From assembly GCA_029953675.1 (NCBI GenBank), contig JAMWBK010000011.1, positions 682,001 to 746,000 on the forward strand: 64,000 bases of DNA. The letters run 5' to 3'. The stretch comes from Rhodosorus marinus CCMP1338 (Eukaryota; Plantae; Rhodophyta). This document shows positions 24,940 to 63,440 of this stretch, piece by piece (within the stretch, counting starts at the first letter, position 1; each line of letters begins with the position of its first letter). A model generated the notes under the pieces. The model searched no databases. It had not been told where the DNA came from and worked only from the letters and a program-made list of their open reading frames with translations. The translations under genes and the position numbers were made by a program.

Positions 24940-24984
24940 ACCTTTCGGATGGGGTTCTCAGCCCAGTTTGAAAATGATCGGAAA

Positions 24985-34662: not shown

Positions 34663-36099
34663 ATGAATTACATTGGGGATATTTTGGATTGGTGTCGGCC
34701 GTCGACAATCGCGTGGCTGCTACAGGTTGAGAACGATGGCAGTGCAGTATCAGAAATGGCAAACGAGCGTGGGCTGTTCGTTCTGGACTTCACTTCGAAC
34801 CTTCCGGTCACCGGAACGTTCCTTAATGACTTTTCGAAACCGACTTTGTACTTGGTCAAGGAGATGTCCGCGGACCTCGTCCAAGGATATGGATGGATTA
34901 TGACTCAAAACAGCACCGAGGGCTATAGTGGACCCTTGGATAGCGTGGAAAGGACTCGGTTTGTGAAGTCTTCCACTATTGCCGGGGGATTGCGATATGC
35001 ACAGGTTTCACAGACTTCTGGGGATTTCTTGTCAGTGATCTACTGTGAGGAGTCCGCAAACGATTTAGCATGCGTGAGTGTGAGAGTGGAGCGGAAAACC
35101 GGTAAAGTGCTTGAGCAGAGCACGTTCGAGCTGCAGAGGACCTGCTCTTTCTGCTCTTTGAGGACGTCCTGTTGCAAATGTCCCTCGACGCTGAAGAACG
35201 GGGAACGTGACCTCCTGCACGAGATCACCTTTGATCAACTGCATGAAGAGGGTCTCAAGTCTTCCGAAAACGGAGATTATCTGGACGGCGTTTGGAACGC
35301 CTTCATCCTGTTCTGGAACACGTATATGGAGGGACGCTGGGTGTACGAGTCCGGAATTGGTCTGGATTTTGTCTTCGAATACAAGCTGATATCAAGTCCA
35401 ATGAAGGTTGGGCAGCACATCGCCGCCATCGATGAATACTCTCAGAGGAAGGCTCACGAGACGCTTGCGCGGTCTGAGATGAAATATGAGAACCAAGTTA
35501 ACGCCGCTTTTGAGGAGATCGCAGCTGAGATCCTCGTATCCACCTCCGAGGCGGATACACTTGCACCGCTTGGCCAACGATCAACAATCCCACTCCACTC
35601 AGAACGGATATTGCACGCGACTGCCTCCGAGCGATCGTTGAAGACCATGAGCGATGGGAACGTACCTTCGTCTTCCAACTCCCTGCCCGGTTTCCATGAT
35701 TGCAGCCAATGTGGAAAGCATTTTGCTCGAAACTATGACCTCCGACGCCACTATGATGCGGTCCACCTGCAGCTGAGACAGCACAAGTGCAAGGACTGCG
35801 GAAAGGGTTTCAACCAAGCGTCCCATCTTCGCGACCATTGGAGTCAGATCCACGGCGAAAAGCACATCCGTTGCACGTTTCCGGGCTGCAACAAGACGTT
35901 TGCCGTTAGACATCGCTACGACCGACACGTCAAGGGCTCGCACCACGGTCGATCCTTCGGATGCGACAAGTGCAATCGATCATACAGAGAACGAAGTCAC
36001 ATGCTCAAGCATAGGCGCACTTGCAACGGGACGCCTTCTCCGAGGAGGCAGAATAACAACAACGGAAGCGTAGCTTTCGCTTTATTTTCGCAGTTCTAG
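34663..36099 (+). CDS. ZF1: intronless protein, unassigned N-terminal domain with a CxxC-x5-CCxC cluster plus four C-terminal C2H2/C2HC fingers
   Basis: Fingers CSQC..HYDAVH, CKDC..HWSQIH, CTFPGC..HVKGSH, CDKC..HRRTC. Central RTCSFCSLRTSCCKCP. Confidence 0.85.
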   Translation: MNYIGDILDWCRPSTIAWLLQVENDGSAVSEMANERGLFVLDFTSNLPVTGTFLNDFSKPTLYLVKEMSADLVQGYGWIMTQNSTEGYSGPLDSVERTRFVKSSTIAGGLRYAQVSQTSGDFLSVIYCEESANDLACVSVRVERKTGKVLEQSTFELQRTCSFCSLRTSCCKCPSTLKNGERDLLHEITFDQLHEEGLKSSENGDYLDGVWNAFILFWNTYMEGRWVYESGIGLDFVFEYKLISSPMKVGQHIAAIDEYSQRKAHETLARSEMKYENQVNAAFEEIAAEILVSTSEADTLAPLGQRSTIPLHSERILHATASERSLKTMSDGNVPSSSNSLPGFHDCSQCGKHFARNYDLRRHYDAVHLQLRQHKCKDCGKGFNQASHLRDHWSQIHGEKHIRCTFPGCNKTFAVRHRYDRHVKGSHHGRSFGCDKCNRSYRERSHMLKHRRTCNGTPSPRRQNNNNGSVAFALFSQF

Positions 36100-36459
36100 A
36101 TCTCTCCGCGGAAACCGAACAGACTCCGGCGAGGCCGGCAACGAGCTTTGGAAAACTTAAGAGCTCGAAGTTCTCTCCTCACTTTCATTTATATATATCT
36201 AATTCTCTTAGGAGCGTCCTTCTCTCAACAAGCGCTCGTCTCTTAGAGGGCCGTTGACGGACATTGTATATAAGGAACGATGATAAAATACCTCCAACAA
36301 ACTAGTTCATGCTGCGTTGACATGCCAAGCGGTATTTCTCACGGTAGATTCTCAGAAGTTGGGACTCTCAATGACCGAAAAAACTGTTCTTAATTATATT
36401 TTTCGTTAGGACTCCGTAGAGCCATTATTCCTAGTTTGGCTATTTACAAAAGGGGTGGA

Positions 36460-37125
36460 TCATGATGCTCGGGAAAACTCAATTTCCTCCCAGGGCGTGC
36501 TTCCGTCGATCTCGTATTCATCGTTATTGCAGTCAAATGACTGACTTGGTACTTCAAAGAAGGGAAAATTCTTGTGCTGCTGAGGTACTTCTAGTGAATT
36601 GTCTTCCCAATCCTTGGTATCCCATGCGCCTAAGTCGTTGTCGACCCGTTCAGTAGTCTGATTCTGGTGGTTAAAACCGTCAGGGTATATCGGAAACTCT
36701 GTGCCTTGAATCCAATACCCTCCTTCTTCCGTTCCTGAGGTCGGCTGACGAATATCTTGAGCAACAAAACGATCATCTGCATAGTTCTCCTGAGATTGGG
36801 GTCCTGCACCAGGCTGCGCCAAGGAGGGCAAAGTCCGAGCGGAGGCTTCCGGCTCTGGTGCGGTGCTCATGAGTTCCAGACTTTCGTAGTCGGCAGCCAT
36901 GTGCTCACGCCTTGTGTGCAGATTCAATTGAGCCTTCCAGTCGAAGTTCATATTGCAGGTTATGCAGGCATACTTCTTAATACCCAAGTGCACCACGGCC
37001 ACATGGTGATCTCGGTTCCAGCTTCTTGTAAAGCTCTTCCGACAAAATTCAAAAGTACAAGGAAAGATCTTCCTTTGCCTCTTCCTTGGACTGGACTTCC
37101 TCTTGAAGCTCTCGTTTCGCAACAT
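36460..37125 (-). CDS. ZF2: two-finger C2H2 protein with acidic C-terminus, convergent on ZF1
   Basis: CTFEFCRKSFTRSWNRDHHVAVVH and CITCNMNFDWKAQLNLHTRREH. First ATG at 37125 (ORF open to 37209); start uncertain. Confidence 0.75.
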   Translation of the reverse strand: MLRNESFKRKSSPRKRQRKIFPCTFEFCRKSFTRSWNRDHHVAVVHLGIKKYACITCNMNFDWKAQLNLHTRREHMAADYESLELMSTAPEPEASARTLPSLAQPGAGPQSQENYADDRFVAQDIRQPTSGTEEGGYWIQGTEFPIYPDGFNHQNQTTERVDNDLGAWDTKDWEDNSLEVPQQHKNFPFFEVPSQSFDCNNDEYEIDGSTPWEEIEFSRAS

Positions 37126-38658
37126 ACTTTCCAATCTGGACGTCTTCCTCAAGCCTATCACCGGCTCCAAACTGTCCACGCGTTGCCAAGCACCCTCCCA
37201 AGAGTTCACCCTCCCCCCCCTCTTTATAACAGTTCAACAAGACGGATTCTCATCCCACCAGGTGGGCACAGCGCGCTAGGGATGCAACTAGGTGCAGCTC
37301 AATGCACTGACAAAATCAGCATCTTTAACGCTTCATTTCCTGAGAAAAATTTCAATCGCTATCGCGTCAAGCAAGGCGCGCACCTGCCAAAAGCTCGAAA
37401 GCAGAACGCCGAACATCAGGGTGCTGTCATTCGCCCTCCGGCTTCTTCTTGCGGCTCATCTCAACCCATCCGTACTCAATCGAAATTTACCAGAATTCCA
37501 CTAGTTCCTCAACATCAGGGTCCTCATCAGGGTCCCAACCCCCCAACCCTCTCATTATCGCAACTGCTCAATAGCTATTAAAAGGAAGCTAACATCAACC
37601 GCTGCCGTCAACGGGCCAATAAAAAAGATCCCAAGCAAAAACTTTTGCACTAAACTATATTCTTGAACTCAAAATGGCGTGAAAAACAAAAGGAAAAACG
37701 TCCTCCATAGATTTCTCGTGCTTCATTGGTTATCCAACTTCATGACGACGAAATAAAAGTCACTCCATTGGTTAAAGATGAGAACTGTAGATTTTCCGAG
37801 AAAGCAACATTTCTTCTCAATACACAAAAATAGATTGTTTTCGGACAGGTGTCCTCGTTTTAGAGGTCAAATGGCAGTGTCGCGAACGTGTGATAATTTG
37901 GTGGGGAGGGGGGGGGGGTCCTTCCTTTTTGTTGGTTTGATGGAATGGGGTTGGTGGGGACTCGAGTTATCGTCCTCCTAGCTCTGCTAATGAACTCGTG
38001 TGTTCCCGCCCCCCAAAAATGTACGTTTCTTGGATTTTTGGATATAAAATGAAGGATTAAGGAGTTTTCTGCAGTACGCAAAAGGGCGTCTTTCAACCTA
38101 AGGATGCGATCTATTTTGATCCGAAAGACCAGGTATTGATAGATGCGCATAAAACATTGACGATACGACTATATTTATCAGATTCGAAGAGAGTATTTTT
38201 GATTCTGCGCTGCTGCAATTTTGAAGACTTTACTAGGAGCGCAGGTGGCGATGGGATGGAGTTGGGCGGGATTGGACGAAGAAGTTGTGTGATGTTGATA
38301 GAAAGTAGAGCGTGTCTCTCTGGACTTTAACCAGAGGCTGGGTGAATCAAGGATTGGAAATTTAAATTTCGTTTTACTGGGGTCCCGATAGGGGCCTCTA
38401 TTCCGTGCCGAAGGGAACGCTCGGCGTGGGAAAGATTGCCCTACAGGTGTTGTTGAGTACCCCCCGCTCAATTCACGACGTGTACGACAACAGCGCAGAC
38501 CCCGGGTCCCTGTAATCAAGAGGGGAGTCGGGTGAGGAAAAGATTGTGTTGAAGGGAGCCTAGAAAGAGGACGAGACCACGAGGAAGCAAGGACTTGTAC
38601 ATAGAGTATTCGCACGCGAGAGCCAGCAAGCGGAAGACCCTATCATACTTGTAGGGTT

Positions 38659-39357: not shown

Positions 39358-39811
39358 CTATCTAACCGCTCAACCTATTCGGACAAAGATCGTGCCTGAA
39401 GACTGCATTCTAGGAACGAATCTGCACCGACAGAATGCGGTCGGTCCTCTCTTCATTCGACGGTTTTGTACGTAAGCTGATGCTTACAACTTGGCAAAGG
39501 AAAACGGCGTTTCTCTCCGTATCGCAGCGTGCATGTGATGGCTGTTATAGCTCAAGTTCCGATTTGCCAGATCTCATAAACGATATTGTGACACTTTATT
39601 TGAATTCCGGATAGTAGTAAAACGGTATAGATCATGAAAATAAAAACAAATAGAGAAGTACAGAGCGCGTTCATTCCAAAAAGAACTGTAAACGAGATCC
39701 TTAAACTAGAGGATACCGTCCCTTATTTAAGCCCGATCATGTCTTAACACAATAACAGCTGTCCATATATATTTGTAAAACACTACTAATTTTGTGCCCC
39801 ACTAGTTTTCT

Positions 39812-39822
39812 GACAGCCTGTC
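39812..39822. promoter_or_regulatory. GACAG-N-CTGTC palindrome
   Basis: GACAGCCTGTC; the same motif occurs at 6047, 13373, 48757 and 63614. Confidence 0.5.
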
Positions 39823-40758: not shown

Positions 40759-42098
40759 ATGTGGTCGATCATAGATTCTACTCTTCGGGAAGGGGAGCAA
40801 TTTATCAACGCTAACTTCTCTCTACCGCAGAAGAAGGAAATCGCGCTCATGTTAGATAACTTTGGGGTGGACTACATCGAACTCAGCAACCCGGCATCTT
40901 CAGAGCAGAGCAGAATAGACTGTACGGCCATCGCCAACCTCGGACTCGGCTGTAAAACTCTAACCCATACGCGATGTAACTTGGAAGACGTTAGACTCGC
41001 CATAGACACAGGAGTCGATGGCGTTGATCTTCTTTTCGGAACCTCCAAATACCTCCGCGACTACGCCCATGGCAAAAGCATCGACTACATAATCGGTAAG
41101 GAAAAATAGCCGCTGCGACCTGATGCACAGCTCATGCAGCGAAGCTGCGCTGGATACCTTGGGGTGCGCCTCCCGTGGCTCGTCCTCTTTGCGTTCTTGC
41201 TGACCCACGTTCTTTCCCATTCTTCTCAACGCCGTGCTTAACAGCAAAAGCCAAAGAGGTGATCAGCATGGCGAAAAATGCGGGCTGCGAGGTTCGGTTC
41301 TCATGTGAAGACAGCTTCAGAAGTGACGCAGAGGATCTGGTTCGAGTCTACCGAGCCGTGGATCGAGTTGGCGTGGACCGTATCGGTATAGCGGATACCG
41401 TAGGGATTGCTCACCCGCAGCAGGTTTCTGAGCTTGTGAGCTCGCTTCGTACTGTTGTCGACTGTGATATTGAGGTGCACTTCCACAACGATACCGGCTG
41501 TGCCGTAGCGAACGCGCATTCGGCTGTACAGGCCGGGGCCACGCACGTCGATACTTGCGTTCTGGGGATCGGAGAGCGGAATGGGATTACTCCTCTGGGT
41601 GGATTTATCTCACGAATGTATGCGGACGATCCTGAGGCTGTGAAAATGAAGTACAACCTGCCCATGATTCCGCACATGGACCACTACGTAGCCAACGCTG
41701 TAGATGTACAGGTACCGTTTAACAACTACTTGAGTGGGTACAGCGCGTTCTCTCACAAGGCGGGAATGCACCTGAAGGCTATGCTTCAGAATTCTTCCAC
41801 GTACGAGGCGTTGAATCCTGACGATTTTGGAGTCTCCAGGGTGGTCAACGTCGCTCACAGACTAACTGGATGGAACGCGGTAAAGAGCCGGGCGGAGCAG
41901 CTGGGATTGTCGCTGCCTGACCAAACGATAAGAGAGGCTACAAAGAGCATCAAAGCGGCCGCCGACGTTCGTCATATAACACTAGACGAGGTGGATCTGA
42001 TTCTACGTGACTTTGATACTCGCCAGATGAACAAGAGGACTGACGAGGGAAGGCTTCATGGCTCGAAGAGCGATCTTCCCACTGCCACGGAATGCTGA
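40759..42098 (+). CDS. LYS20: Homocitrate synthase (396 aa); exons 40759-41095 and 41245-42098
   Basis: [104 protein letters not shown]. No IPMS-type regulatory domain. One phase-1 GT-AG intron. Confidence 0.92.
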
Positions 42099-44588
42099 TC
42101 TTTGCTTCTGAGAGATATCCTTTCTGACCCATGGAAGTGCTAACTGATAAAGCGAGGTTGCTTCCTCGCATGCCATGTCTGTGTCCGTTTTTGGGGGGCT
42201 CTTTGTTGTATTGCGGTTCGTGTTGTACTAATATCTTGGCTTCTGCAAATTTTTTTTGTTATGTTCTGGTCTGCTAAGAAGGGGGGTATCATAGCTTCAT
42301 TGAATTAGAGATGCTTACTACTGAGGCCTCAGCGGATAAATTGGTAGAGCACCCTGCACCCAGGAAAGAACGAGGCACTCGCTTCCGAAGCTCTGCTAAA
42401 TTTGTTTCTCGCTTCGGGGCGGTGTTGGGTTTTAAAAAAACATTTCGCCTGTGCGCGGGAAAACGACTTGAACTTGTAATGCAACCGCAAGCTGTCAATT
42501 CAGTGCGTACTTCGGAGCATCCAGGGGCCCAATAACTAGCCACAAGCGAAACCGGTCTTTACCCCCTCCCGGGGTCCGTCGGAGCAGACGTGAAGGCTAG
42601 AAATCTAGAATCCACCGGCAGCTCATTCCATGGATTTTATACGATCAAGACCCCTACAAAGGAAAATTTGACGTTTCCATCCTTTTCGGCGTTGTTCGTC
42701 ATCCTTATTGACCATCCAAACATAGCCGGGAGTAATCGATTCGATACGGTGTGGCTCTACTGCGGCGAGCAGGATTTACAACCGAACATTTTGTTCAGAA
42801 AAAACTGTGGATTTGGGCTTCATCCCCTTGAATAATGCCTAATTTCCCAAGCGCCTGGCTTTCAACCAGTCCTTGGCGTGGAAAGGCCATCGCGGCTCCT
42901 ACAGCTCGTGCTTCTCCGAACTCACTCTCCCTGCCTCCCTCTGCATAATCGATGAGCTCCGTCCCTATCGCCAGACTTTCAAATGATTTGGTTCTTTTAA
43001 AGACCATCGCTTTGAGCCAGCAGTTCCTCTTCAGTGGGGAGCTTCGCCATCTTCTTCGGTTTTGAAGCCGAAAGAAAGCTCGAGTCGCGTGCCCAACCAC
43101 GCCTCCTAGGCGGGGCATGCCACGGCAAACAGCAGCTTTGGTTCGTCATCAGCGCCATCTCACCAACCATCGCATTGGCTGAAATTTCTTGATTATCACA
43201 AATGAAAACGACGAACAACTTGTTTTCCCCCACATTATTGGCTGTATTGCACTGTAAGATTCACAACCCGAGCTTGTTTTTGTTTTAAACATGGTCCAGA
43301 TATATGTTATTTTGATTCTTTTAGAAATCTATTATTTTTATTTTGTTTTACATTAACTGGTTTCGAAAAAACGGCCAATGCTCTGCTACGAATATATATT
43401 TTCGTTACTTTCTTTAGGTACAGCGATCCTCCATCATTTCGGTTTCGTTTTATGAGATGTTTAGTATAGACCCTCCAAAATTATTCTATTGCAAGATTAA
43501 TATAGTCCTTTAATTGGATAGCTGACGGAATAATGGCTTTTCCTTGATATGTTTTGCTTTTTGTTTAGGAATATCGGTCTAAATATTTACGTTTTCATGG
43601 AATATTCGAACAAGTCATGTCTCACTAGCTCCTCTTTTTACGATATTTTTATATTGCACGACGTATCCTATGTATTTTATTCAACTAGATGAATAGTTGG
43701 GTGATGAATTTGTCTAATATTAATATGTTGGTCGCAGCTTTTTTGGTTCGCCAGGGAACCTTTTGTTGGTATGGGAATGGCGATGGATTTTTTGAGAGAA
43801 GTCGAAATTTTATTTTGTTTTCATAGGTAGGACGATGTCAGCAAAGGAGATTGGGTACCAGTGTAGCTGAACTTGACTACCATGGTAAAACGATGGGTGT
43901 TGGGGTGAAAAAACCTGGCGAAGCTTACGAAAAAAACGTAGATAGAAGTGTTGAAACGCTGTGCGTCGATCGATGAGTGCAATAGTGCCATAGCTCTGAG
44001 TCGAGAAGGGTGGGGTGATGAACGCTGCGCTGGACTGCTTTGTGTGTATACTTTCTAAGAGTTGTTGGACGACTCAGCTTCGGAATATCCATCTTCAATC
44101 GGATTCGCACAGTGACGGAGCTCCACCTATCATACTGAACTGTGATGCTCCTTTGTATTACGTAGGATTTAAGCAATCTTTGAATCGGAGACTCAAAACA
44201 CAGGAGGAAAATAATTACTGAATGTGCCCCTCCCGAGGGAGTCATCTTATGGGCTAATAACAGACCATGGGGGTCAATCCTTCGTGGAGGTCGCACCTTA
44301 ACTTGATCCGGTCTAAAACCGAATGGTTTCGATTCCTCTGGTTCGTGCAGAACGTCGATTACTTAGTTCCCCGTTCGGTGACTGCGGGTGGCGATACAGT
44401 TTCATCCTTTTGTTTGTTGTTGTATCTATGCGAAGTCGAGATCCATCTTACTATGGGGAAAATTTTGTATCTTGAAATATGACCTTTTGATTGTTTTCCT
44501 CTAAAACAAAGAAAAATGGGAAGTTGGTTAGATGAATTAATTGGTCGCTGTGTGTTGGTCGATGTCTGGGTGAGTTTAGTTAAGAATA

Positions 44589-44752
44589 GTCTGGGTGACA
44601 AGGGCTGGCTAAGCCGTCGTTTCCATGGGGCGAGAAGGGCGGGGGGTTGCAGGGTTTTGAAGATCTACATCGTCTGGGTGACAAGGGCTGGCTAAGCTGT
44701 CGTTTCCCTGGGGCGAGAAGGGCGGGGGGTTGCAGGGTTTTGAAGATCTACA
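44589..44752. repeat. 83-bp tandem duplication (2 mismatches)
   Basis: gtctgggtgacaagggctggctaagc...gaagatctaca at 44589 and 44672. Confidence 0.95.
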
Positions 44753-45284: not shown

Positions 45285-46505
45285 ATGGAAGCTTTTAGGT
45301 TTTTGTCGGAGAAAACAACATCGTGGATAGCGTCTCCAAGTGAAACCGACAAACACATCTTGACGGACTCGAGCATACCGGGAGAGACCAGTGTGCTAAC
45401 CCTTTCACGCGTGAGCGGATTACTTCCAGGAGCATTGGTTGATCAGATACTATGTTCATATCTCGTTTGGACAACCAATATAGAGGGGCACGTGCTCGGA
45501 ATGGGCCTCGCGCGGTCTGAGGACGGAGGATCCACGAGGCCAGTTCGATTTGTTTTTGTTCGGCACGCAGGAAATGTGAGGATAGGAATATTTTCAGTCC
45601 GAAACACAGATGGTTCGGCGGTTGTTTGGTCATGGACAGAAACCAGCAGGTCTCTTGCGCAAGTTCAGATCGCTAGAGTAGATCGAACAGGAGCCATTGA
45701 CGGAGAACAGATGAAACTTTCACTAGAGCAGACAGTGGCTGGTGAGGAGGTTAAAGCCCTACCCGGTGGCGTAGTCAGCACGGATAGTATGATGGCAGGG
45801 ACAGTTTCCACGGTTGGAGCGAGATACATGGACAACAACCTTGGCAGGCTCTCTTATTTTCTCCACGGGGTTTGGCTCTTTCGCGATGATCACGTTTCGG
45901 ACTCGGACTGCTTGATTAAGGTAACCTTCTCGTCTGACCGTGATGTAGTGGAGAAATTGAGTTCGCAAATTGAACGCAGCAAATGCCTGCTGGACGCGAT
46001 GAACCAGATCGATCTCCTACTGTCAGAATCCGCGTCCCTTTCGGGCGTCGAAGGGTCGCTGAAAACAGACAGCAGCTTTTCCGCTTCTATTGCCGACCCA
46101 TCGGAGCAAGGAGAAATCACTAGTCCTTTGGCAGGACGGTCGAGATTGCAGAGGAGGGTCACGTTCGACTCTTGCGAAATGCCTTTCAGTTCAACGTACC
46201 AGCTAGGTCAGCATATGAGATCTGCTCACAACCAAAAAAGAGAGTTCTCATGCAGGCATTGCAAAAGGACATTTACCCAATCGGGCCATAGGAACGAGCA
46301 TGAGCGCCGAGAGCACTTGGGAGAAGGGCTTGCTTGCGAGCTTTGCGGGAAAAAGTTTGGGGTCAAGTCCAGGATGGAGAGACACGTGAGATCTGTGCAT
46401 GAGAACATTCGAAGCCATGAATGCGGGGTTTGCGGAAGCAAATTCAAGCAAAAATCGCACTTACAAAAGCATGAAAGATCCCATCAGTTTGCAAAGGACA
46501 AGTAG
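45285..46505 (+). CDS. ZF3: family N-terminal domain plus one degenerate and three intact C2H2 fingers, intronless
   Basis: 406-aa ORF with CRHC..QSGHRNEH, CELC..VKSRMERH and CGVC..QKSHLQKH. The first finger (TFDSCEMPF) lacks its first Cys. Confidence 0.85.
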   Translation: MEAFRFLSEKTTSWIASPSETDKHILTDSSIPGETSVLTLSRVSGLLPGALVDQILCSYLVWTTNIEGHVLGMGLARSEDGGSTRPVRFVFVRHAGNVRIGIFSVRNTDGSAVVWSWTETSRSLAQVQIARVDRTGAIDGEQMKLSLEQTVAGEEVKALPGGVVSTDSMMAGTVSTVGARYMDNNLGRLSYFLHGVWLFRDDHVSDSDCLIKVTFSSDRDVVEKLSSQIERSKCLLDAMNQIDLLLSESASLSGVEGSLKTDSSFSASIADPSEQGEITSPLAGRSRLQRRVTFDSCEMPFSSTYQLGQHMRSAHNQKREFSCRHCKRTFTQSGHRNEHERREHLGEGLACELCGKKFGVKSRMERHVRSVHENIRSHECGVCGSKFKQKSHLQKHERSHQFAKDK

Positions 46506-48504: not shown

Positions 48505-49125
48505 CTTGTCATAACCTGTCCGATAAACGTTTTATCGGACGCGTCGGATAATTTTTTTTGCTGGTAGATTATTGAATAAATGTAGAAAACAAGACGGTAA
48601 CCGGTCGAAACTCTTCAAAAAAAAGATAACAGGTCCCATATATGTCCAATATTCAATCAACATTAATCTATAATCAATCATCTCCATTCCATATATTAAA
48701 TCATGATTACTTTTTGTACTGACCAGCGGTATTGCATTTAGATTACTTTTGAGATGGACAGACTGTCGAAGAGAATTGTTAGAACTGTTCAGGGAGGTTC
48801 TTACAAGAATCTAATGGTTTTCCAGAATACTCAAATTGGAAGGGAATGATTATGGATTAATTTGGCATCCACGCAGTTTTCGCGTCAATTTCCGGAGGAA
48901 GAAGATTGAATTTCAATCAATATTTACCGTAGATTGAAATCAATCGGACACCAAGCTGTCGCTTATTGAAGGATACCCTCTATTTTCTTTTTTAAACAGG
49001 TGAAATAGATTTGTATCGGATAGAGGCCAAGAGACTCCAAATCCACTCATGATTATTTAATTAGAGGACGAATAAGACATTATCGGACATTATCGGACTT
49101 TTTTTCAGACGAAAAGGACAACCGA
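48505..49125 (+). mobile_element. Non-coding dispersed element (MITE/Helentron-like), copy 2
   Basis: Hairpin GTCCGATAAA-CGT-TTTATCGGAC (48518-48540), GACAGACTGTC (48757), TTATCGGAC repeats at about 49080-49098. Homologous to 13125-13690 reversed. Confidence 0.6.
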
Positions 49126-49924: not shown

Positions 49925-51160
49925 ATGGAAAAAGGTGAGCTTCAGTTGGACTTCGTCTTGAGGCACACAGTGGAAGATGACGGTGGAATATGCAGTATGG
50001 GAGTGCTCTCGGCATTGTCGGAGGGGGAGAAGTCGTGGATTCTATTTAAAGACAACAAACTCTTGTCCACGACCAGTCCTGCGCGAGGGAGAAAGGTTCT
50101 TAGTTTCTCGCGTTTGAATGGTTCACCTGAGTCGGGTTTGCTCGAAAAGTTGCTCTGTTCATACCTCGTTATGGGATCGTGGGGAGATGAACATGAATTT
50201 GGGGTGGGTGGTGCGTTGTATGAGGACGGTGTTGCCGCGATGCCGATGCGATATGTGGTGGTTCGTGATGCTAGCCAGGTGATGTCCACGATAATTTCCA
50301 TACGAGAAGTAGACGGTTCGTTCGTAGTTTGCTCGTGGACGGTAGTGAATGAGTCTTTGGTGGAGATTGAGATTGGCCGAGTGGATAGCGAAGGAGAAAG
50401 TTGTGCAGAGCAAGTGAAGACCGTTGGGGAACGGAGGACGAGTGGCGCGGAAGCCTCGGGATTCCCGGTATGCGTACTCGAAGAGCGGGTTGTATCGAAC
50501 GGAGTTGGTTCGAGGTTTAAAGAGAGCGGCAGGCATCGGGAGATCGGGGCGTTCTCACCCTCGGTGAACGGCGTGTGGTTTCTACCTGACGAGCCCTTCA
50601 ACATCTCAGATTTTCTGATGAAGGCCACCTTCTCCTCGACAACTGAGGTTGTTGAGAAAGTGTGCTCTCAGTTTGAACAACTCCGGAGGTCCTCATCCAG
50701 GCAGATGGATGCGCCCCCTCCAGCGGAGGCAGAACTCATGGAACCAACGGAACGAGAAGTTTCATTGCCCACAATAACAACCTCTTCCGCCGCAGTAAAA
50801 CCCTCTGATCCGAACAAGCCCTTCAAGTGCGAATCTTGTCATATGTCGTTCAAATCAAATTATGAACAGATTCGACACAGAAGGAACGTCCATGAGGGGA
50901 GCAGGGCGTATCCTTGTCGCCATTGCAGGAGAAGTTTTTCTCAGTCGGGACATAGGAACGGACACGAGCGAAAGGAGCACCTTGGTCAGGGAGAAGTGTG
51001 CGGCTTATGCGGCAAGAAGTTCGGCGTGAAATCCAAGTTGGAGAGGCATGTGAGAACAGTTCACGAAAACATTCGAAACTACGAGTGCCCTAGATGTGGA
51101 CTGAGATTCAAGCAGGCGAACCACCTTCAGAAGCATCAAACCACCCGCCATAGGCCTTAG
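49925..51160 (+). CDS. ZF4: family N-terminal domain plus four C2H2 fingers, intronless
   Basis: 411-aa ORF with CESC..SNYEQIRH, CRHC..QSGHRNGH, CGLC..VKSKLERH and CPRC..QANHLQKH. N-domain collinear with ZF3 and ZF5. Confidence 0.88.
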   Translation: MEKGELQLDFVLRHTVEDDGGICSMGVLSALSEGEKSWILFKDNKLLSTTSPARGRKVLSFSRLNGSPESGLLEKLLCSYLVMGSWGDEHEFGVGGALYEDGVAAMPMRYVVVRDASQVMSTIISIREVDGSFVVCSWTVVNESLVEIEIGRVDSEGESCAEQVKTVGERRTSGAEASGFPVCVLEERVVSNGVGSRFKESGRHREIGAFSPSVNGVWFLPDEPFNISDFLMKATFSSTTEVVEKVCSQFEQLRRSSSRQMDAPPPAEAELMEPTEREVSLPTITTSSAAVKPSDPNKPFKCESCHMSFKSNYEQIRHRRNVHEGSRAYPCRHCRRSFSQSGHRNGHERKEHLGQGEVCGLCGKKFGVKSKLERHVRTVHENIRNYECPRCGLRFKQANHLQKHQTTRHRP

Positions 51161-54135: not shown

Positions 54136-54374
54136 TTTTTGTTACTTAAGGTGGGCTTCAATGTGTGGCCCACCGATAGCGTGGTACCTATGCCATCTGG
54201 GATATGGTTCTGTCAGGATTGGAGGAAGTTAGTTGCAGATTGGGTGCTATATGATTTTTGTTACTTAAGGTGGGCTTCAATGTGTGGCCCACCGATAGCG
54301 TGGTACCTATGCCATCTGGGATATGGTTCTGTCAGGATTGGAGGAAGTTAGTTGCAGATTGGGTGCTATATGAT
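54136..54374. repeat. Perfect 119-bp tandem duplication ending at the ZF5 start codon
   Basis: tttttgttacttaaggtgggc...gggtgctatatga at 54136 and 54255. Confidence 0.97.
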
Positions 54375-55616
54375 GGAGAGTTGCCAACTGCTCATGGATT
54401 CTAGTATTCCCCTTGACATTTCTTTCTTCGAGGATGGGATCCTCGGCTATCATCATAGAATGGGTACCTTTGAAGTGCTATGTACCATCTCGGGTGCGAC
54501 CAAGTCATGGCTTCTATTTGAGAACGAAACAGGTTTAGAATGGTCTGCTAGACCATACGAGCAGAGATCGCAGGTGCTCAGTTTTTCGCGACTACAGGGC
54601 TCGCCGGGACCGGAACTGCTTGAAAAGCTGCTCTGTTTGTATCTGGTGAGGATTTCTGCGGACGAGCAGAACCTGATTGGAAGCGGCTACGCACTCTCTG
54701 AGGACGGAGTTGCGGCTTTTCCGATGCGTCATGTGGTGCCGGGCAGGTGATGACTATATTTTCTATACTCGACGCGGATGGAAACGTATCCGTTTGCTCG
54801 TGGAAGGAGTTGAGCGAGTGCCTCGTAGAGATTCAGATCAGTAGGGTTAACGGCGAGGGCTATTTCATCAGAGAGCGGATCAAGTACTGGGGAGAGAGGA
54901 GTACGAGTACTGGTGCGTCTTCAGGGTCGCTTTGGGGCTTTTGGGAGGAGAGTTGAGCAGTACCCCAAGTTGGCCCGAGATTTGACCTTGAAGCCGCGGA
55001 TCAAAGGCTAGGCATCTTCTCAGGCTCGATGAACGGGTTATGGCTTCTTCGAGATGAGCTTTCTTCGGACTTGGACGTGATGCTTAAAGCAACTTTCACC
55101 TCTGAAACCGAAGCAATTGAGAGAGTGAACTCTCAAATTGAAGCGTGCAAACTCAGAAAAGAGTTTCTGCAAGAGCTCGATCTTCTTTTGTCCGAACCGA
55201 ACTCTACTTCTGGAACGGAAGAGTCGTTGAGATCTCACAAGAAGCACAAGTGTCAATGCGGAATCTCATTCAGAACGTTTTACCAGCTAACGCGGCATAA
55301 GAAATGGGTTCACGAGGGGAGGAAGGAATATTCTTGTGGGCACTGCTCCCGGCGCTTTTCCCAATCCGGACACAGGAACGAGCACGAGCGCCAGGTGCAT
55401 TTGCGCGATGCGTTAGTGTGTGAATACTGCGGCAAAATGTTCGGTATTAAGTCCAGAATGGACAGACATATCAGAGCCGTGCACGAAAACGTTCGAGATC
55501 ACGAGTGCACGCTGTGTGGAAAGATGTTCAAGGAGAGAAACCACCTACAGAAGCACCTGCGTTGTACACACTCGCATGAATCACAGGTACATCAAGATGC
55601 TGGGGCAAGTTTTTGA
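54370..55616 (+). pseudogene. ZF5: paralogue of ZF4 with a frameshift (about 54740) and an in-frame TGA (54954-54956); finger ORF 55029-55616 intact
   Basis: Three collinear segments align to ZF4 (VLSFSRLQGSP, AAFPMRHVV, VSVCSW..VEIQISRV, MNGLWLL). Four intact fingers. Confidence 0.8.
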
Positions 55617-58504: not shown

Positions 58505-59200
58505 ATGCAAATCGGCGGGACGATGGAGTTGTTCGACGAGGTGCTGGACCAGCACGTGAAGGGGATGTTTTTCGAGAATACGGCCATTCCATTGTGTCTG
58601 AGCTTGAGTGACGAGTTCCTGTTCCCGGAGTTTGATGCGGATGGGGATTGCCCTGTTGTTAGAGAAACGCGTATAACCCCCATCGCTATCCCGGAGCCGA
58701 GTACAACGGAGATGCAAAGCATTTTTGACGACATCTTCGAGATTTCGGATGTGAGCTCGCCTTCATCTCCCGTGTCTGTTCAGCCTCGGGAAATGGAGCT
58801 CATTCCCAGTTCACATCTGGTATCGGCGGTTTCAACTGTTTCCAAGGACACCGTATCCTCCACGAGTCAGGGCAAGGGAAGCGAATCCTGCGAAATCACA
58901 GAGTCGAAGAAGCCCAAGCCTTTCACGTGCAGGTACTGTGAACGAAGGTTCTATCAGTCTGGACATAGAAATGAGCACGAGAGGACTATTCACTTTGGAA
59001 ATGGTTACAAATGCAAACCATGTGGGATCCTCTTCGGAAACAAGTCGAAACTTGACAGACACGTCCGATCCGTGCACAATAATGTTCGCAGATTCGAGTG
59101 TGAAGAATGCGGCTTCAAGTTCAAGGAGAAGTGCCACCTGGTGAAGCACGCTAAAGCGCACGAGAGAAAGCGCGTACTTCAAGCAAATATTACCAGATGA
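58505..59200 (+). CDS. ZF6: three-finger C2H2 ORF; broken N-domain sequence upstream (about 58180-58500)
   Basis: CRYC..QSGHRNEH, CKPC..NKSKLDRH, CEEC..EKCHLVKH. Upstream SDGHCHAMGAKLRHVYIV and ERVVCRLEVRV are broken by stops. Confidence 0.8.
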   Translation: MQIGGTMELFDEVLDQHVKGMFFENTAIPLCLSLSDEFLFPEFDADGDCPVVRETRITPIAIPEPSTTEMQSIFDDIFEISDVSSPSSPVSVQPREMELIPSSHLVSAVSTVSKDTVSSTSQGKGSESCEITESKKPKPFTCRYCERRFYQSGHRNEHERTIHFGNGYKCKPCGILFGNKSKLDRHVRSVHNNVRRFECEECGFKFKEKCHLVKHAKAHERKRVLQANITR

Positions 59201-59499
59201 ATTATTAACTTATGTAATGGACAAACTAAAAGAAAAACTACAACACTTTCCGTACAAATTCTTCCCAAGTTATTGCCCAAGAACGTTTTTCAGGCTTGTA
59301 AAAACTCGGACACCGAACTCCGACACGCCAAACCCCCAGTCTTGTTGAAAAAAAACTACGCCAAGGGAAGCTATGGCGACGGGTCCCCTCGCTTGTGACC
59401 CAATTAGCAAGCACGAACAGAAACGAACGTCAGCGTCTGTATGTGGCTGACAAATTATGAAGGAGACGTCGTGCTTGCTAGTTGCTCCCAAGTCGCTCA

Positions 59500-59953
59500 A
59501 GTCTGTGAAGACTGTTCTCCGGGCCCGTACTGCCAGTTGCTTCCGTAGCTACCAATCGAGTCATCCCGGAATCCTGCTGAGTTCTTCGCCGAGGTTTCCT
59601 AAGTGCTCCAGGTGGCTCGCAGACAGTCTCTTGTACTGGTAATTTCTTCACACTTCCTCAAGTGACCCTAGCCTTCTAGGACAGGAGCAAGACCCCTGGC
59701 CACGGTCTGAAGCAACAGAATACAACTCCATTCCCCTCAAGAAAGAACGCAAATTATTAAACGTGCCGCCCGGCAAGTTGATATATATAGGATCACCACT
59801 CTCTAAAATTATGAAACTTGATGGGAAGGTCCAGTACACAGAACACCGTGAAAGTCCCAAATTCAAGTTCCGTCTCAGAATGAGTTCAAATTTAGCTCCG
59901 CACGTGTCTTTCTGAAGTGCAAGTGAGAGAAACTGCTCCAGATTTCCGTACAA
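59500..59953 (-). pseudogene. Possible decayed family copy convergent on ZF6
   Basis: YSVASDRGQGSCSCPRRL resembles CSFCSLRTSCCKCPSTL, and the later GSNWQYGPG resembles EGRWVYESG. Confidence 0.28.
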
Positions 59954-60100
59954 TAGAGTTGTGTTTGTTCAGATTTAGGTCACGTTGGCAAAGGGGAGGG
60001 TGTGAGCTTTGAAAATTAACACGTACATTTTACGCGTCTCCCCTAATTTTTAGTGATGGATTCTGGCAATCAATTTCACCCCAGACTAAGCTTAGGGGGT

Positions 60101-60476
60101 GTTGATGAGCCAGCCCTCCCGAGCACTTCAACTAGTGAGGCTATGTGTTGCTAGCGAGTGCAGACAAAAGAACTCTCGCTGGATTCGGGCGATCGCTGCT
60201 TGCTGTTATTCGAGTGTGCGCAACTCGACAACAGCTCAAATCATTGTGCAGCAAGAAAAAAAGGAGTTCGCTGGTAGAGTGGTAAGAGTGGTTGATGAGC
60301 CAGCCCTCCCGAGCACTTCAACTAGTGAGGCTATGTGTTGCTAGCGAGTGCAGACAAAAGAACTCTCGCTGGATTCGGGCGATCGCTGCTTGCTGTTATT
60401 CGAGTGTGCGCAACTCGACAACAGCTCAAATCATTGTGCAGCAAGAAAAAAAAGAGTTCGCTGGTAGAGTGGTAAG
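60101..60476. repeat. 186-bp duplication at 190-bp period (1 mismatch)
   Basis: gttgatgagccagccctccc...gagtggtaag at 60101-60286 and 60291-60476. Confidence 0.97.
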
Positions 60477-60489
60477 CAGTTCGGACTCC

Positions 60490-60923
60490 AAGCTATCTTT
60501 TTAAGATTTGCCCACAATTTACCGTAAACAATCTCTCGAGGAAGTGTGCTTTGATGATTGTTCTTCCATAGCAACAGTGTATGCACAATTCTCGTTCGAT
60601 ACATGCGCATAACCAATCAAGTAGAATGCCAAACTGGGATCCGGCGAAGTGTTTTTTCACAGCATAGAGATCACGATACATCGTCACGCCCCAAGCGCTG
60701 TGAGCACACCTCGCTGAACATCGCAGCAAAGCAGATAGCGCTTGAATTCCATATGAAGCGACAACTCATCCCCTCGCATTCGCGATGGTACAAAAGGAGC
60801 CAATCCCAGAACTCCCCATACGCGCAGAGCACAACCTAGGTAAATTCCATCTTGTACAAACCGCCTCTTTTCACTTGAGTCCAGTGTAAGCCCGCCTTTG
60901 CTCTCCATGCTCGTGTCCACCAC
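60490..60923 (-). pseudogene. Decayed copy of the ZF1-type N-terminal domain
   Basis: TLDSSEKRRFVQ versus PLDSVERTRFVK in ZF1, and DELSLHMEFKR versus NDLACVSVRVER. Confidence 0.42.
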
Positions 60924-61169
60924 AACATAATCCTATGCATCAACCTCGGGAAACACACTTAGCTCCAGGAACAAAAAGCTACCCATTTACCGGTCTCGCC
61001 ATGGGTCCCCTTGACTTTCCTTATCCGATTGTCCAAAAAGAATTTCCTGTCGTAGGCTTACGCTTTCAGCTCCCTCTCGAATTCAGCTTCCGATCCAGCA
61101 ACCACACAAGGCAAGGATGCTGTGCGGTCTCAAACAACATCCACGAAAGCATAAGGTACACAGGAAAAA

Positions 61170-61292
61170 AATAAAAGAAGGACAGCCTGTTCCACAGAAT
61201 CTTTTTCTTATAAAAATCTAAGGGACAGTCTGGCCGTCGAGAACTTGGTTTTATCTAAAAATATTAATGATATCAATTGCATGTCCCAATTG
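61170..61292. repeat. GGGAC/GTCCC-family element with a near-palindrome GACAGCCTGTTC
   Basis: 61267-61292 is the reverse complement of 12752-12777 (core TGGGACATNCAATTGAT); GACAGCCTGT at 61181. Confidence 0.5.
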
Positions 61293-61825
61293 AATCTTCG
61301 TTCGGAGTGGAAGCCTTATTTGGATACAGCGCGCTAAGCGCCGATCATCAAAAATCTAAAAATAGTTGTTTTTGTTTCTTTAGAGCTTATGATTGGTGGT
61401 TTGCACAGTAAGCAAACGGTTGGGGAGATCTTGTGGGACGATGCTACGAGTTATTTTTGGAAACCACCGTCCGTGGAGAAGTTGTTTTTCGTTTAATTTA
61501 AGCAGTACTTGAAAGGGGTTTTTGCGGTGGTGGATCGCAACCGGCCTCACGACGTGGGTGATCGACTCGGTTTCCATCGGTCCCTAAGCAGCGTGAGGCG
61601 TGAGCGTAGCTTACTTGGATTCAAATTATGATCACTCCTTTATCTCATTGCCGGAGCTTACAGCGGATTGCACGACCTGAATTCGGCTGGAGAGCCTGGG
61701 TTGTAACGATAGTGCCACAATGGATATAAAACTCTTGAGCCGGTCTCGCATCCTTTCTTCTTTGGCTGGGGACTGTAGGAGCTCGGAAGGTACTGTTAGA
61801 GTGGGGTTCTTGACGGTATATCTAC

Positions 61826-62371
61826 GTGCGACTAGTCTTCATCCTGGAGAAGCAAAGCGACATACTGGCCCTGGCTTTCTGGGAGTCAGGACTGTTTGGG
61901 CAAAGAGGTGGATATGAGCCGAACGGCTTACTGGAACAGGAGTTGTTGATGGGAGAATTTGTTCCGGAAGAGAACTCTGAGTCCTGTCTTTCGCCGAGTA
62001 CAGAAGGCACACTCTCGGCTAGAGATTTGCTGAATGACATCGCTACTGCATCCCAGTGGCCGAGCATAAGCGAGCTCGATGAGAAAGGTTCTCAAGGAGC
62101 AAGGCAGAAAATGAAGAAAGCCCACAAGTGTCGGTTCTGTGAGAGCGAGTTCACGCAGAGCGGCCATCGGAATGAACACGAGGGCAGATTCCACTTAAAC
62201 TTGGGGCACAAGTGTGATATCTGTCAGCAGACATTTGGGATGAGATCAAAGCTGCACAGACATCTTCGAAACGTTCATATTCAGGAGAAGAGGTTTGAGT
62301 GCCACTGCGGAAAGCGATTTAACGAGAAGTATCACCTGAACCGGCACATGAAGATACACAAAGATACATGA
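61826..62371 (+). CDS. ZF7: three-finger C2H2 ORF with truncated, decayed N-domain (first ATG 61949)
   Basis: CRFC..QSGHRNEH, CDIC..MRSKLHRH, CHC..EKYHLNRH. The ORF opens at GTG with VRLVFIL, resembling MRYVVV. Confidence 0.75.
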   Translation: MRLVFILEKQSDILALAFWESGLFGQRGGYEPNGLLEQELLMGEFVPEENSESCLSPSTEGTLSARDLLNDIATASQWPSISELDEKGSQGARQKMKKAHKCRFCESEFTQSGHRNEHEGRFHLNLGHKCDICQQTFGMRSKLHRHLRNVHIQEKRFECHCGKRFNEKYHLNRHMKIHKDT

Positions 62372-62599
62372 CTTTGCGCCATTCCGCAGGTGCTTTTTTG
62401 AGGATCAATATTTAATATCAATAAACTTAGCTTAATCATCGTATCACCAGTTAAGTTTCAATGTTGCCGCGTGTATCCGAGCAACCGGTAAACTTTGCCG
62501 TTTGTAGTCAGGTAGTCCCGTCCTTTCTATGTCGTTGTAATTCTTCTAAAGGGTGGTGGTTTACTAACATAGCCTTAAGTGCTACGCACTGCGGAAAGG

Positions 62600-63440
62600 G
62601 AACTACGCGCTAGGGCCAAAAGCATGCAAGCCCTGTCGGCCAAAAGAAAGGAGCAATCGCGTCCAGTGACCATTTGTAAAATCAATCATGCCTTCAGAAT
62701 AGCCGTGAACAGATGCCCGACAAAGCACCAACACACGTTCGTGAAGCGACGAAGGAGGTTTCCTTTTGCAAGAGTGCTTTATCATCATCACAAGGCAACG
62801 ATACAGCCTTTTCTACGAGGTTGAGAGCTCTCACTGTCATGCTATTCAAAGAAGTTTTCTGTTTTCGACTACTGTCCTTCATCCGAGGTCGGTAATAAAA
62901 TTGACTCGCTCCGGATCCTGTTGGGCCCCACTGGAAGTCGAGAAATGGAGAAATGGTGACGTCGCGGCATATATCCACTCATTTTTCCTGTTAAAATTTA
63001 AAGCTCGACAAAAATCAGTGTCAGGGAAGAATGGCAATGATATGTTCTTTGAGACGGAAAATTTCAAATACTTTACAAAGCGGTAGGAATCGGTTGTATT
63101 TTCTGAGGAAGTCCGAAATGCACCCTATGGCGTTTGGTTCAGGTTGAGATTTGGAGTCCTCAAGTTTAGTAGAGCTGCTCATGTCAAACGATAGCAGCAC
63201 GCTCTGACATTGAGGTTCCGGAGGTTCCGGATCCAACAACGCATGTGAAGAAAGGCCGATGGATGATGTGATCTTCCAACTTTCATAGAGGGGGCGGTGG
63301 GGGGAGGAAGGGGAGTTTCTCACTACAGGTTTCAACTGAGACAAACGACTTGGAGTCATTTCAGAAGCAATCAACCTTCTTCCCACCAGCGCAGAAGCGA
63401 AATATTTTGTTGACAAGACCCACTTCAGTGAGCGATTCAA
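62600..63440 (-). pseudogene. Decayed finger-less family copy convergent on ZF7
   Basis: LLQKETSFVASRTC resembles VLEQSTFELQRTC, DFTNGHWTRLLLSF (62663-62686 region) resembles DYLDGVWNAFILFW, and SW..HALLDPEP..SVLLSF resembles the ZF3 N-terminus. Confidence 0.42.

What the first reader, a model, noticed from the sequence alone, without database searches (positions are those of the whole stretch)
34663..63440. Expanding and decaying family: unassigned N-terminal domain plus C2H2 array
Seen: six finger genes (34663, 45285, 49925, 54370, 58505, 61826) with finger-by-finger homologous arrays. The intact ones share a ~250-aa beta-rich N-domain (VLxF, YLV, G-x-EH-x-FG, RY/FV, CSW, EIxRV, NGVW). All are intronless among intron-bearing neighbours, and about 10 broken copies are apparent across 64 kb. 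Knowledge: KRAB-, ZAD- and SCAN-ZNF clusters show this birth-and-death pattern and often target transposons. Inference: a lineage-specific effector-domain/ZNF system, possibly spread by retroposition or as transposon cargo. I recognise no Pfam domain but could not search.
Basis: partly seen in the sequence, partly recalled or inferred. Interest (0 to 1): 0.82.

Follow-up and report, generated by a model that had tools for sequence, protein, structure and literature searches.

The report
Red-alga tandem zinc-finger gene cluster
This is an old tandem cluster of intronless C2H2 zinc-finger (probable transcription-factor) genes in the red alga Rhodosorus marinus; three carry an N-terminal domain seen only in this genus, and the cluster is neither a large expanding family nor transposon-borne.

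Summary
The window is Rhodosorus marinus CCMP1338 nuclear contig JAMWBK010000011.1. The six + strand C2H2 genes are real and their fingers align one to one. A seventh two-finger gene lies on the - strand, and at least three more C2H2 genes follow beyond the right edge.

The ~290-aa N-domain is shared only by ZF2, ZF3 and ZF4 (about 40% identity). ZF1 has a different 345-aa N-region with no detectable similarity. ZF5 and ZF6 have short acidic N-termini. Six-frame HMM scans find none of the "~10 broken copies". Decay is inside the members instead: ZF4 has a frameshift and an in-frame TGA, and finger 1 is degenerate or lost in ZF2, ZF4, ZF5 and ZF6.

The N-domain has no Pfam or PDB match. An exhaustive search of 1.84 billion representative proteins finds it convincingly only in Rhodosorus. 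AlphaFold2 models are unusable (pLDDT 35 and 33).

DNA-contact residues are conserved (68% against 40% at other positions). The finger tree follows map order, and no transposon or retrogene hallmarks are present. This argues against a KRAB-like arms race and against retroposition.

ZF1 is under purifying selection (dN/dS 0.33; fingers 0.12). The ZF3 orthologue in another strain carries a nonsense codon and a broken finger (dN/dS 0.66).

The parts
34663..36099 (+). ZF1: intact 478-aa gene. Its own 345-aa acidic N-region includes a Cys-rich motif (RTCSFCSLRTSCCKC). Four fingers at about 35701-36030, the last of C2HC type.
   Evidence: Pfam zf-C2H2 E 3.5e-07. An intact orthologue, P0009/L003, is 82% identical. 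dN/dS is 0.33 overall and 0.12 in the fingers. The N-region is not similar to that of ZF2-4.
36460..37125 (-). ZFm: annotated 221-aa gene convergent with ZF1 (the longer ORF runs to 37209). It has two C2H2 fingers and is only generically similar to the others.
   Evidence: Regex fingers at 37059 and 36966. Finger-array HMM E 5.5e-09. Called as a gene in the assembly's annotation.
45285..46505 (+). ZF2: intact 406-aa ORF. N-domain at 45285-46154. Finger 1 is degenerate (first Cys lost). Fingers 2-4 at 46251-46484.
   Evidence: N-domain HMM E 2.5e-138. The assembly's annotation starts at an internal Met, window 45501 (334 aa), but homology to ZF3 extends back to 45285.
49925..51160 (+). ZF3: intact 411-aa gene. 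N-domain at 49925-50815. Four intact fingers at 50828-51151.
   Evidence: The orthologous transcript L002 is colinear (about 80% nucleotide identity in the CDS, 72% in the flanks) but carries an in-frame TGA at codon 169 and a His-to-Pro change in finger 2.
54370..55616 (+). ZF4: disrupted copy. The N-domain is broken by a frameshift at about 54736-54741 and an in-frame TGA at 54954-54956. The downstream ORF 55029-55616 (195 aa) still encodes a degenerate finger 1 (C-x-C) and fingers 2-4.
   Evidence: It is annotated as two separate genes of 125 and 195 aa.
58505..59200 (+). ZF5: 231-aa gene with an acidic, Ser-rich N-terminus (pI 4.1) and no N-domain. It keeps a finger-1 relic ('SESCEI') and fingers 2-4 at 58928-59161.
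61949..62371 (+). ZF6: annotated 140-aa gene (the ORF extends up to a GTG at 61826). Short acidic N-terminus. Fingers 2 and 3 at 62129-62278. Finger 4 has C-x-C spacing, as in ZF7 and ZF8 beyond the window.

Best explanation
This is an old, locally duplicated head-to-tail array of intronless C2H2 zinc-finger genes in the nuclear genome of the red alga Rhodosorus marinus. At least nine lie on the + strand, six of them in the window.

ZF2-ZF8 keep a homologous three-finger core. Its signature helices are F-x-QSGHRNEHE in finger 2, FG-x-KS-xx-x-RH-x-R-x-VH in finger 3, and F-K/N-x-K-x-HL-x-K/R-H in finger 4. The DNA-contact residues are conserved, so these paralogues most likely bind related DNA motifs as sequence-specific transcription factors (inferred). 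ZF1's four fingers align one to one with them at about 33% identity but carry different helices.

The genes differ in what is attached at the N-terminus:
- ZF1 has its own conserved 345-aa region.
- ZF2, ZF3 and ZF4 share a ~290-aa acidic domain that looks beta-rich and is known only from Rhodosorus. It is most likely a protein-interaction or regulatory module (inferred).
- ZF5-ZF8 have short acidic tails that resemble activation regions (inferred).

The family evolves by tandem duplication followed by piecemeal loss:
- Finger 1 is degenerate or lost in every copy examined except ZF1 and ZF3.
- ZF4 is disrupted.
- The ZF3 lineage is under relaxed constraint, and its orthologue in another strain is already damaged.
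- ZF1 is under clear purifying selection.
For: - Identity of the locus.
- Fingers.
- N-domain confined to ZF2, ZF3 and ZF4.
- N-domain confined to Rhodosorus: one search gives six hits at E <= 0.001 among 1.84 billion representatives. Five are Rhodosorus. The sixth is a Calx-beta protein with five near-identical repeat matches and only 9% hhalign probability.
- Conserved contact residues, 68% against 40%.
- Tree follows map order, ((ZF2,ZF3),ZF4), ZF5, (ZF6,(ZF7,ZF8)).
- Paralogues reach only about 70% nucleotide identity, in the finger region alone, and intergenic DNA is unique.
- Decay.
- Selection (bootstrap 95% intervals): ZF1 0.33 (0.24-0.47), ZF1 fingers 0.12 (0.02-0.34), ZF3 N-domain 0.46 (0.29-0.72), ZF3 fingers 0.73 (0.38-1.47).
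- Transcription: related-strain transcripts L002 and L003 for ZF3 and ZF1.
- Acidic N-termini.
- Background: C2H2 is the most abundant transcription-factor family in non-cyanidiophyte red algae (PMC12567131).
Against: - No functional data of any kind. DNA binding and transcription-factor activity are inferred from the fold class alone.
- The N-domain could not be modelled (pLDDT 35), so its status as a folded domain rests on 40% identity between paralogues and a dN/dS of 0.46.
- Finger 2 has Arg where the hydrophobic core Leu normally sits, and finger 4 of ZF6-8 has C-x-C spacing. Some fingers may therefore not fold canonically.
- The ZF4 lesions could in principle be assembly errors.
- dN/dS comes from single pairwise comparisons.
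- The far end of the cluster and the rest of the genome could not be surveyed for the finger family.
Confidence: 0.72

Rival explanations
1. A KRAB-, ZAD- or SCAN-like system: a lineage-specific repressor domain fused to rapidly diversifying finger arrays that track transposons in an arms race.
For: The architecture is similar: an N-terminal accessory domain, a C-terminal C2H2 array, a tandem cluster, and some broken members.
Against: - Contact residues are conserved rather than diversified.
- Arrays have only 3-4 fingers and lack TGEKP linkers.
- Only three loci carry the N-domain.
- No KRAB, ZAD, SCAN or BTB hit in Pfam.
- Duplications are old, at about 70% nucleotide identity in the finger region only.
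- No transposon domains in nine sampled intergenic ORFs.
Confidence: 0.05
2. The copies were spread by retroposition or carried as transposon cargo.
For: All members are intronless in a genome that averages about 3 introns per gene. A founder retrogene cannot be excluded.
Against: - Copies are head to tail at about 3.3-4.6 kb spacing, and the phylogeny mirrors map order. This is the signature of unequal crossing-over.
- No poly(A) relics.
- No direct or inverted terminal repeats around the units.
- No reverse transcriptase or transposase in the sampled intergenic ORFs.
- The only dispersed repeat seen is one 215-nt MITE-like element between ZF2 and ZF3.
Confidence: 0.06
3. The 'N-domain' is not a functional folded domain. 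ZF2, ZF3 and ZF4 would then be a young, fast-evolving and largely dispensable subfamily, possibly with an N-region born de novo from upstream sequence of a finger-only gene, that is on its way to loss.
For: - No homologue outside the genus.
- pLDDT of 35.
- One of the three genomic copies is broken, and the one known orthologue has a nonsense codon.
- dN/dS is about 0.95 in the segment between the beta-rich part and the fingers, and 0.73 in the fingers.
- Finger-only relatives ZF5-8 exist next door.
Against: - The first 175 residues have dN/dS 0.46, with a bootstrap upper bound of 0.72.
- ZF2 and ZF3 keep 40% amino-acid identity across the N-domain although their N-domain DNA is no longer alignable by blastn. 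That implies long-term protein-level constraint.
- The ZF3 orthologue is transcribed.
Confidence: 0.2
4. ZF1's N-region is a very diverged homologue of the ZF2-4 N-domain, so a single ancestral N-domain-plus-four-finger gene founded the whole cluster.
For: - The finger arrays of ZF1 and ZF2-4 align one to one.
- Several short motifs occur in the same order: VLxF, YLV, GxG, RxV, RV(D/E), GVW.
- One semi-global test against ZF2 gave z = 3.4.
- Both low-confidence models put a beta meander in the middle and a long helix before the linker.
Against: hhalign E 0.72 and 0.38. Local Smith-Waterman z of -0.4 and 1.3. The N-domain HMM gives ZF1 no score at all, whereas 633 of 1000 shuffles do score.
Confidence: 0.2

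Closest known systems
Lineage-specific C2H2-ZNF tandem clusters with an N-terminal accessory domain (KRAB-ZNF in tetrapods, ZAD-ZNF in insects, SCAN-ZNF in vertebrates)
   Same: An N-terminal non-DNA-binding region followed by C-terminal C2H2 fingers. Tandem genomic clustering. The accessory domain is restricted to one lineage. Intact and decayed members coexist.
   Different: - No sequence relation to KRAB, ZAD or SCAN.
- Only 3-4 fingers with non-canonical linkers.
- DNA-contact residues are conserved among paralogues.
- The subfamily is tiny, with three loci.
- Duplications are old.
- No link to transposons.
Ordinary small C2H2 transcription factors with 3-4 fingers and an acidic activation region (Sp/KLF/EGR-like in animals; Msn2-, Mig1- or Crz1-like in fungi); C2H2 is the dominant transcription-factor family of non-cyanidiophyte red algae (PMC12567131)
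   Same: A three-finger DNA-binding core at the C-terminus, acidic N-terminal regions, and purifying selection on the fingers of ZF1.
   Different: - No orthology to any named family was found. The only non-Rhodosorus hits were generic animal ZNFs matched through the fingers.
- H-x4-H spacing in most fingers.
- Arg at the core Leu position of finger 2.
- C-x-C variant of finger 4 in ZF6-8.
Calx-beta domain (PF03160)
   Same: A 39-residue stretch of the N-domain (PMRYVVVRDASQVMSTIISIREVDGSFVVCSWT) resembles the Calx-beta strand pattern. A Calx-beta repeat protein was the only non-Rhodosorus hit in the exhaustive search.
   Different: The E-value of 3.5e-07 sums matches to five near-identical repeats. 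hhalign probability is 9%. Pfam Calx-beta does not hit ZF2 or ZF3 at E <= 1. This is a lead only.

Membership tests
C2H2 zinc finger (Pfam PF00096 / PF13894) | C-x2-4-C-x12-H-x3-5-H units scoring above the Pfam gathering threshold | tested here: met
   All six + strand genes score 28-55 bits against a cut-off of 25.2. The regex scan finds 20 canonical fingers, all inside the seven loci.
C2H2 zinc finger (Pfam PF00096 / PF13894) | Sequence-specific nucleic-acid binding | not testable with these tools
   Needs DAP-seq, a protein-binding microarray or EMSA.
KRAB-ZNF / ZAD-ZNF / SCAN-ZNF / BTB-ZNF | A recognisable KRAB (PF01352), ZAD (PF07776), SCAN (PF02023) or BTB domain N-terminal to the fingers | tested here: not met
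   Pfam scan at E <= 1 gives only finger-type families and noise in the N-regions.
KRAB-ZNF / ZAD-ZNF / SCAN-ZNF / BTB-ZNF | Paralogues diversify at DNA-contact positions -1, 2, 3 and 6 | tested here: not met
   Contact positions are 68% identical among ZF2-6, against 40% for other non-structural positions.
KRAB-ZNF / ZAD-ZNF / SCAN-ZNF / BTB-ZNF | A large, recently expanding family with many copies and relics | tested here: not met
   Three N-domain loci in the window and in 1.84 billion representative proteins. No extra relics. Paralogues are about 70% identical at the nucleotide level, in the finger region only.
Processed retrogenes / transposon cargo | Intronless copies of an intron-bearing parent | tested here: inconclusive
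   All copies are intronless, but no intron-bearing parent was found, and one could not be searched for genome-wide.
Processed retrogenes / transposon cargo | Dispersed insertion with a poly(A) tract, target-site duplications, or flanking LTR/TIR and transposon genes | tested here: not met
   Tandem head-to-tail order with a tree that follows the map. No poly(A) relics. No flanking repeats. No Pfam hit in nine sampled intergenic ORFs.
   hhalign E 0.72 and 0.38. Smith-Waterman z of -0.4 and 1.3. No HMM score. Fold-level similarity could not be tested because both models have pLDDT 33-35.

The most novel reading that the evidence does not exclude
The ~290-aa N-terminal region of ZF2, ZF3 and ZF4 is a true folded effector or interaction domain that arose within the Rhodosorus lineage, possibly de novo from sequence upstream of a finger-only gene like ZF5-8. 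It would then be caught here at several stages at once: under selection in ZF2 and ZF3, broken in ZF4, and carrying a nonsense codon in another strain. That would make it a compact natural example of the birth and death of a transcription-factor accessory domain.
Probability: 0.15. Interest if true: 0.55.

Novelty: new variant of a known kind. Interest (0 to 1): 0.28.

Why it matters
C2H2 proteins are the largest transcription-factor class in most red algae, yet almost none has been characterised. This cluster gives a compact set of paralogues that share one DNA-binding core but carry three different N-terminal modules, one of them an orphan domain restricted to a single genus. If the domain proves functional, it adds a new accessory domain to the C2H2 repertoire outside animals and gives a tractable case of domain gain and loss. 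If not, the locus is simply an ordinary, partly decaying tandem gene family. The present evidence leans towards the ordinary reading, and nothing here bears on a long-standing open question.

Tried and rejected
- **Fold assignment of the N-domains.** AlphaFold2 gave pLDDT 35 for ZF3 (six-sequence alignment) and 33 for ZF1 (two sequences). Foldseek against PDB with the ZF3 model returned only generic beta-meander or beta-barrel matches at E >= 0.03. This is uninformative.
- **PDB sequence search.** Searches with both N-domain profiles found nothing below E = 0.16.
- **Calx-beta lead.** It came from the exhaustive search and was rejected as unsupported: hhalign probability is 9% and there is no Pfam hit.
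- **Relic copies.** Six-frame HMM scans, tblastn and a regex scan found none beyond the seven loci.
- **Transposon or retrogene hallmarks.** Self-blastn, the repeat finder, a poly(A) scan and Pfam on nine intergenic ORFs found none.
- **Scans of metagenome contigs for further transcripts.** Both came back empty. The second should have recovered the known transcript L002 and did not, so that collection evidently lacks the record. These negatives say nothing.
- **Word-indexed protein searches.** They failed to return some of the window's own proteins. Their failure to find orthologues of ZF2 and ZF4-8 is therefore not evidence of absence.
- **Walking further right.** This was not possible, because look-ups are limited to proteins encoded in the window.


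Full report
**Where the window comes from.** ZF3 (49925-51160) is identical to a gene on NCBI assembly GCA_029953675.1, contig JAMWBK010000011.1 (1.44 Mb), at record positions 731925-733160. That accession is the nuclear genome of the red alga Rhodosorus marinus CCMP1338. It is 31.2 Mb with 8392 genes and 24,821 introns, assembled from Nanopore and PacBio HiFi reads (PMC10250338). Window position 1 corresponds to about record position 682001.

**Checking the observation: fingers.**
- Pfam confirms C2H2 fingers in all six + strand ORFs at the stated starts.
- A regex scan of all six reading frames finds 20 canonical fingers, all in seven loci: the six reported, plus a two-finger gene at 36460-37125 on the - strand.
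- The arrays align finger by finger.
- ZF2-ZF6 share a three-finger core. Its nearly invariant helices are F-x-QSGHRNEHE (finger 2), FG-x-KS-xx-x-RH-x-R-x-VH (finger 3) and F-K/N-x-K-x-HL-x-K/R-H (finger 4).
- ZF1 has four fingers that align one to one with these at about 33% identity.
- Finger 1 is intact only in ZF1 and ZF3. In ZF2 it has lost its first Cys. In ZF4 it has C-x-C spacing. In ZF5 only the relic 'SESCEI' remains. In ZF6 it is absent.

**Checking the observation: the N-domain.**
- The shared N-terminal domain exists in three loci only.
- ZF2 and ZF3 are about 40% identical over roughly 290 residues (tblastn E about 1e-84; Smith-Waterman z = 52).
- ZF4 carries the same domain in pieces.
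- ZF4 is not intact. Its reading frame shifts at about 54736-54741, and an in-frame TGA lies at 54954-54956. The assembly's annotation splits it into genes of 125 and 195 aa.
- ZF1's 345-residue N-region shows no significant similarity to this domain. hhalign gives E 0.72 and 0.38. Local alignment gives z of -0.4 and 1.3. The N-domain HMM gives it no score, although most shuffled controls do score.
- ZF5 and ZF6 have only short acidic N-termini.

**Checking the observation: broken copies and introns.**
- The 'about 10 broken copies' are not there. Six-frame HMM scans with the N-domain profile and the finger-array profile give nothing better than E = 2.9 outside the seven loci.
- The intronless claim holds. 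Related-strain transcripts align colinearly with ZF3 and ZF1.
- The annotated neighbours (PEMT, PPTA, SET, HMGL-like) all have gene spans longer than their products.

**Extent of the cluster.** The cluster does not end at the window edge. Fetching 10 kb beyond ZF6 shows ZF7 (152 aa) and ZF8 (169 aa). Both are of the ZF5/ZF6 type. A further 378-aa C2H2 gene starts at record position 754333. I could not walk further.

**How the family arose.**
- Paralogues are alignable at the DNA level only in the finger region, at about 70% identity. Intergenic DNA is unique.
- A neighbour-joining tree of fingers 2-4 reproduces the gene order: ((ZF2,ZF3),ZF4), ZF5, (ZF6,(ZF7,ZF8)).
- No terminal direct or inverted repeats surround the units. 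There are no poly(A) relics downstream, and none of nine sampled intergenic ORFs has a Pfam hit.
- This is the pattern of old, local tandem duplication, not of retroposition or transposon carriage.
- Nine adjacent intronless genes in a genome with about 3 introns per gene is still notable. An intronless founder, for example a retrogene, cannot be excluded.

**What the N-domain is.**
- It has no Pfam match at E <= 1 and no PDB sequence match below E = 0.16.
- An exhaustive HMMER search with the profile against 1.84 billion representative proteins returned six hits.
- Three are the window's own products: P0003 from ZF2, and P0004 and P0005 from the two halves of ZF4.
- Two are MMETSP ORFs from one transcript (P0002, P0007). 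This is the ZF3 orthologue from another Rhodosorus strain.
- The sixth is a protein with five Calx-beta domains (P0006). Its E-value of 3.5e-07 is the sum of matches to five near-identical repeat units. hhalign gives only 9% probability, so I treat it as a lead and no more.
- AlphaFold2 predicts a beta meander at residues 77-169 and a helix at 239-261, but at pLDDT 35. Foldseek finds nothing significant.
- The domain is therefore an orphan, known only from Rhodosorus, with an undetermined fold.

**Selection and decay.**
- The ZF3 orthologous transcript (L002) aligns through both flanks (about 72% identity) and the CDS (about 80%), which supports orthology.
- It carries an in-frame TGA at codon 169 and replaces the first zinc-binding His of finger 2 with Pro.
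- Pairwise dN/dS is 0.66 overall.
- For the first 175 residues of the N-domain it is 0.46 (bootstrap 95% interval 0.29-0.72).
- For the segment before the fingers it is about 0.95.
- For the fingers it is 0.73 (0.38-1.47).
- ZF1, in contrast, has an intact orthologue that is 82% identical (P0009, UniRef A0A7S3A323, Rhodosorus marinus). Its dN/dS is 0.33 overall and 0.12 in the fingers.
- ZF1 therefore behaves as a conserved gene. The ZF2-4 subfamily is only weakly constrained and is partly decaying.

**Likely function.** What is shown is fold class, conservation and transcription. The rest is inferred.
- DNA-contact positions -1, 2, 3 and 6 of fingers 2-4 are 68% identical among ZF2-6, against 40% for other non-structural positions. 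The paralogues should therefore recognise related DNA motifs.
- All N-terminal regions are acidic, with pI between 4.1 and 5.1.
- The most economical model is a set of sequence-specific transcription factors. They share one DNA-binding core and differ in their regulatory or interaction modules.
- The conserved contact residues and the small copy number argue against a KRAB-like arms race with transposons.

**Comparison with known systems.**
- The architecture resembles the KRAB, ZAD and SCAN zinc-finger clusters: an accessory N-domain, C2H2 fingers, and tandem clustering.
- None of the defining domains is present, and the evolutionary mode differs.
- It is closer to ordinary small C2H2 factors, the dominant transcription-factor class in non-cyanidiophyte red algae (PMC12567131).
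- I rate it a new variant of a known kind: a C2H2 family with an uncharacterised, genus-restricted accessory domain.

**Limits of this analysis.**
- The word-indexed protein searches missed some of the window's own proteins.
- The metagenome-contig collection evidently lacks the MMETSP records. Absence of orthologues for ZF2 and ZF4-8 therefore cannot be concluded.
- The rest of the R. marinus genome was surveyed only through its predicted proteins in the exhaustive N-domain search.

**Verdict.** The locus is a real but modest, old and partly decaying tandem family. Interest 0.28.

Noticed in passing
L004:13095-13553, L004:15178-15687, L004:20385-20423 (record JAMWBK010000011.1 positions 747043-754371, beyond the window's right edge): The cluster continues past position 64000. 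There are two more short three-finger genes (ZF7, ZF8) and the start of a 378-aa C2H2 gene. The full extent of the array is unknown.
   Followed up: partly
window 54136-54373: A perfect 2 x 119-bp tandem duplication ends exactly at the ZF4 start codon region. Similar young two-copy tandem duplications lie at 44586-44751 (83 bp, upstream of ZF2), 60101-60476 (190 bp, upstream of ZF6) and 4896-5018 (60 bp). They could be recent duplications or assembly artefacts.
   Followed up: no
window 13472-13684 (+) and 48507-48717 (-): A dispersed repeat of about 215 nt (about 68% identity by blastn). It contains internal inverted ATCGGAC / GTCCGAT motifs and looks MITE-like. One copy lies between ZF2 and ZF3.
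   Followed up: partly
window 25470-25552 (-): An 83-nt tRNA (Rfam 53.8 bits) for which ARAGORN cannot assign the anticodon. It probably contains an intron. It is flanked by a direct repeat of about 160 nt at 71% identity (24984-25144 and 26263-26417).
   Followed up: no
window 62297-62359; L004 ZF7 and ZF8 finger 4: Finger 4 of ZF6, ZF7 and ZF8 has C-x-C spacing in place of C-x2-C, conserved in all three paralogues. Finger 2 of ZF2-ZF8 has Arg at the position of the canonical hydrophobic Leu. Both are unusual C2H2 variants.
   Followed up: no
window 35140-35185 (ZF1 residues about 160-175): The ZF1 N-region contains a Cys-rich motif, RTCSFCSLRTSCCKCPS. It is largely conserved in the orthologue (one Cys becomes Ser) and might be an additional metal-binding knuckle.
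   Followed up: no
L002 (JGI 3300016967, MMETSP Transcript_12907) codon 169; window 54954-54956: Two independent in-frame TGA codons fall in the poorly conserved middle segment of the protein, one in the ZF3 orthologue and one in ZF4. In both cases an N-terminal ORF and a finger-bearing C-terminal ORF remain open. Truncated finger-only products resembling ZF5-8 might still be made.
   Followed up: partly
window 40759-42098 (+): An intron-bearing HMGL-like/homocitrate-synthase-like gene (396 aa; Pfam HMGL-like and HCS_D2) sits inside the cluster between ZF1/ZFm and ZF2.
   Followed up: no
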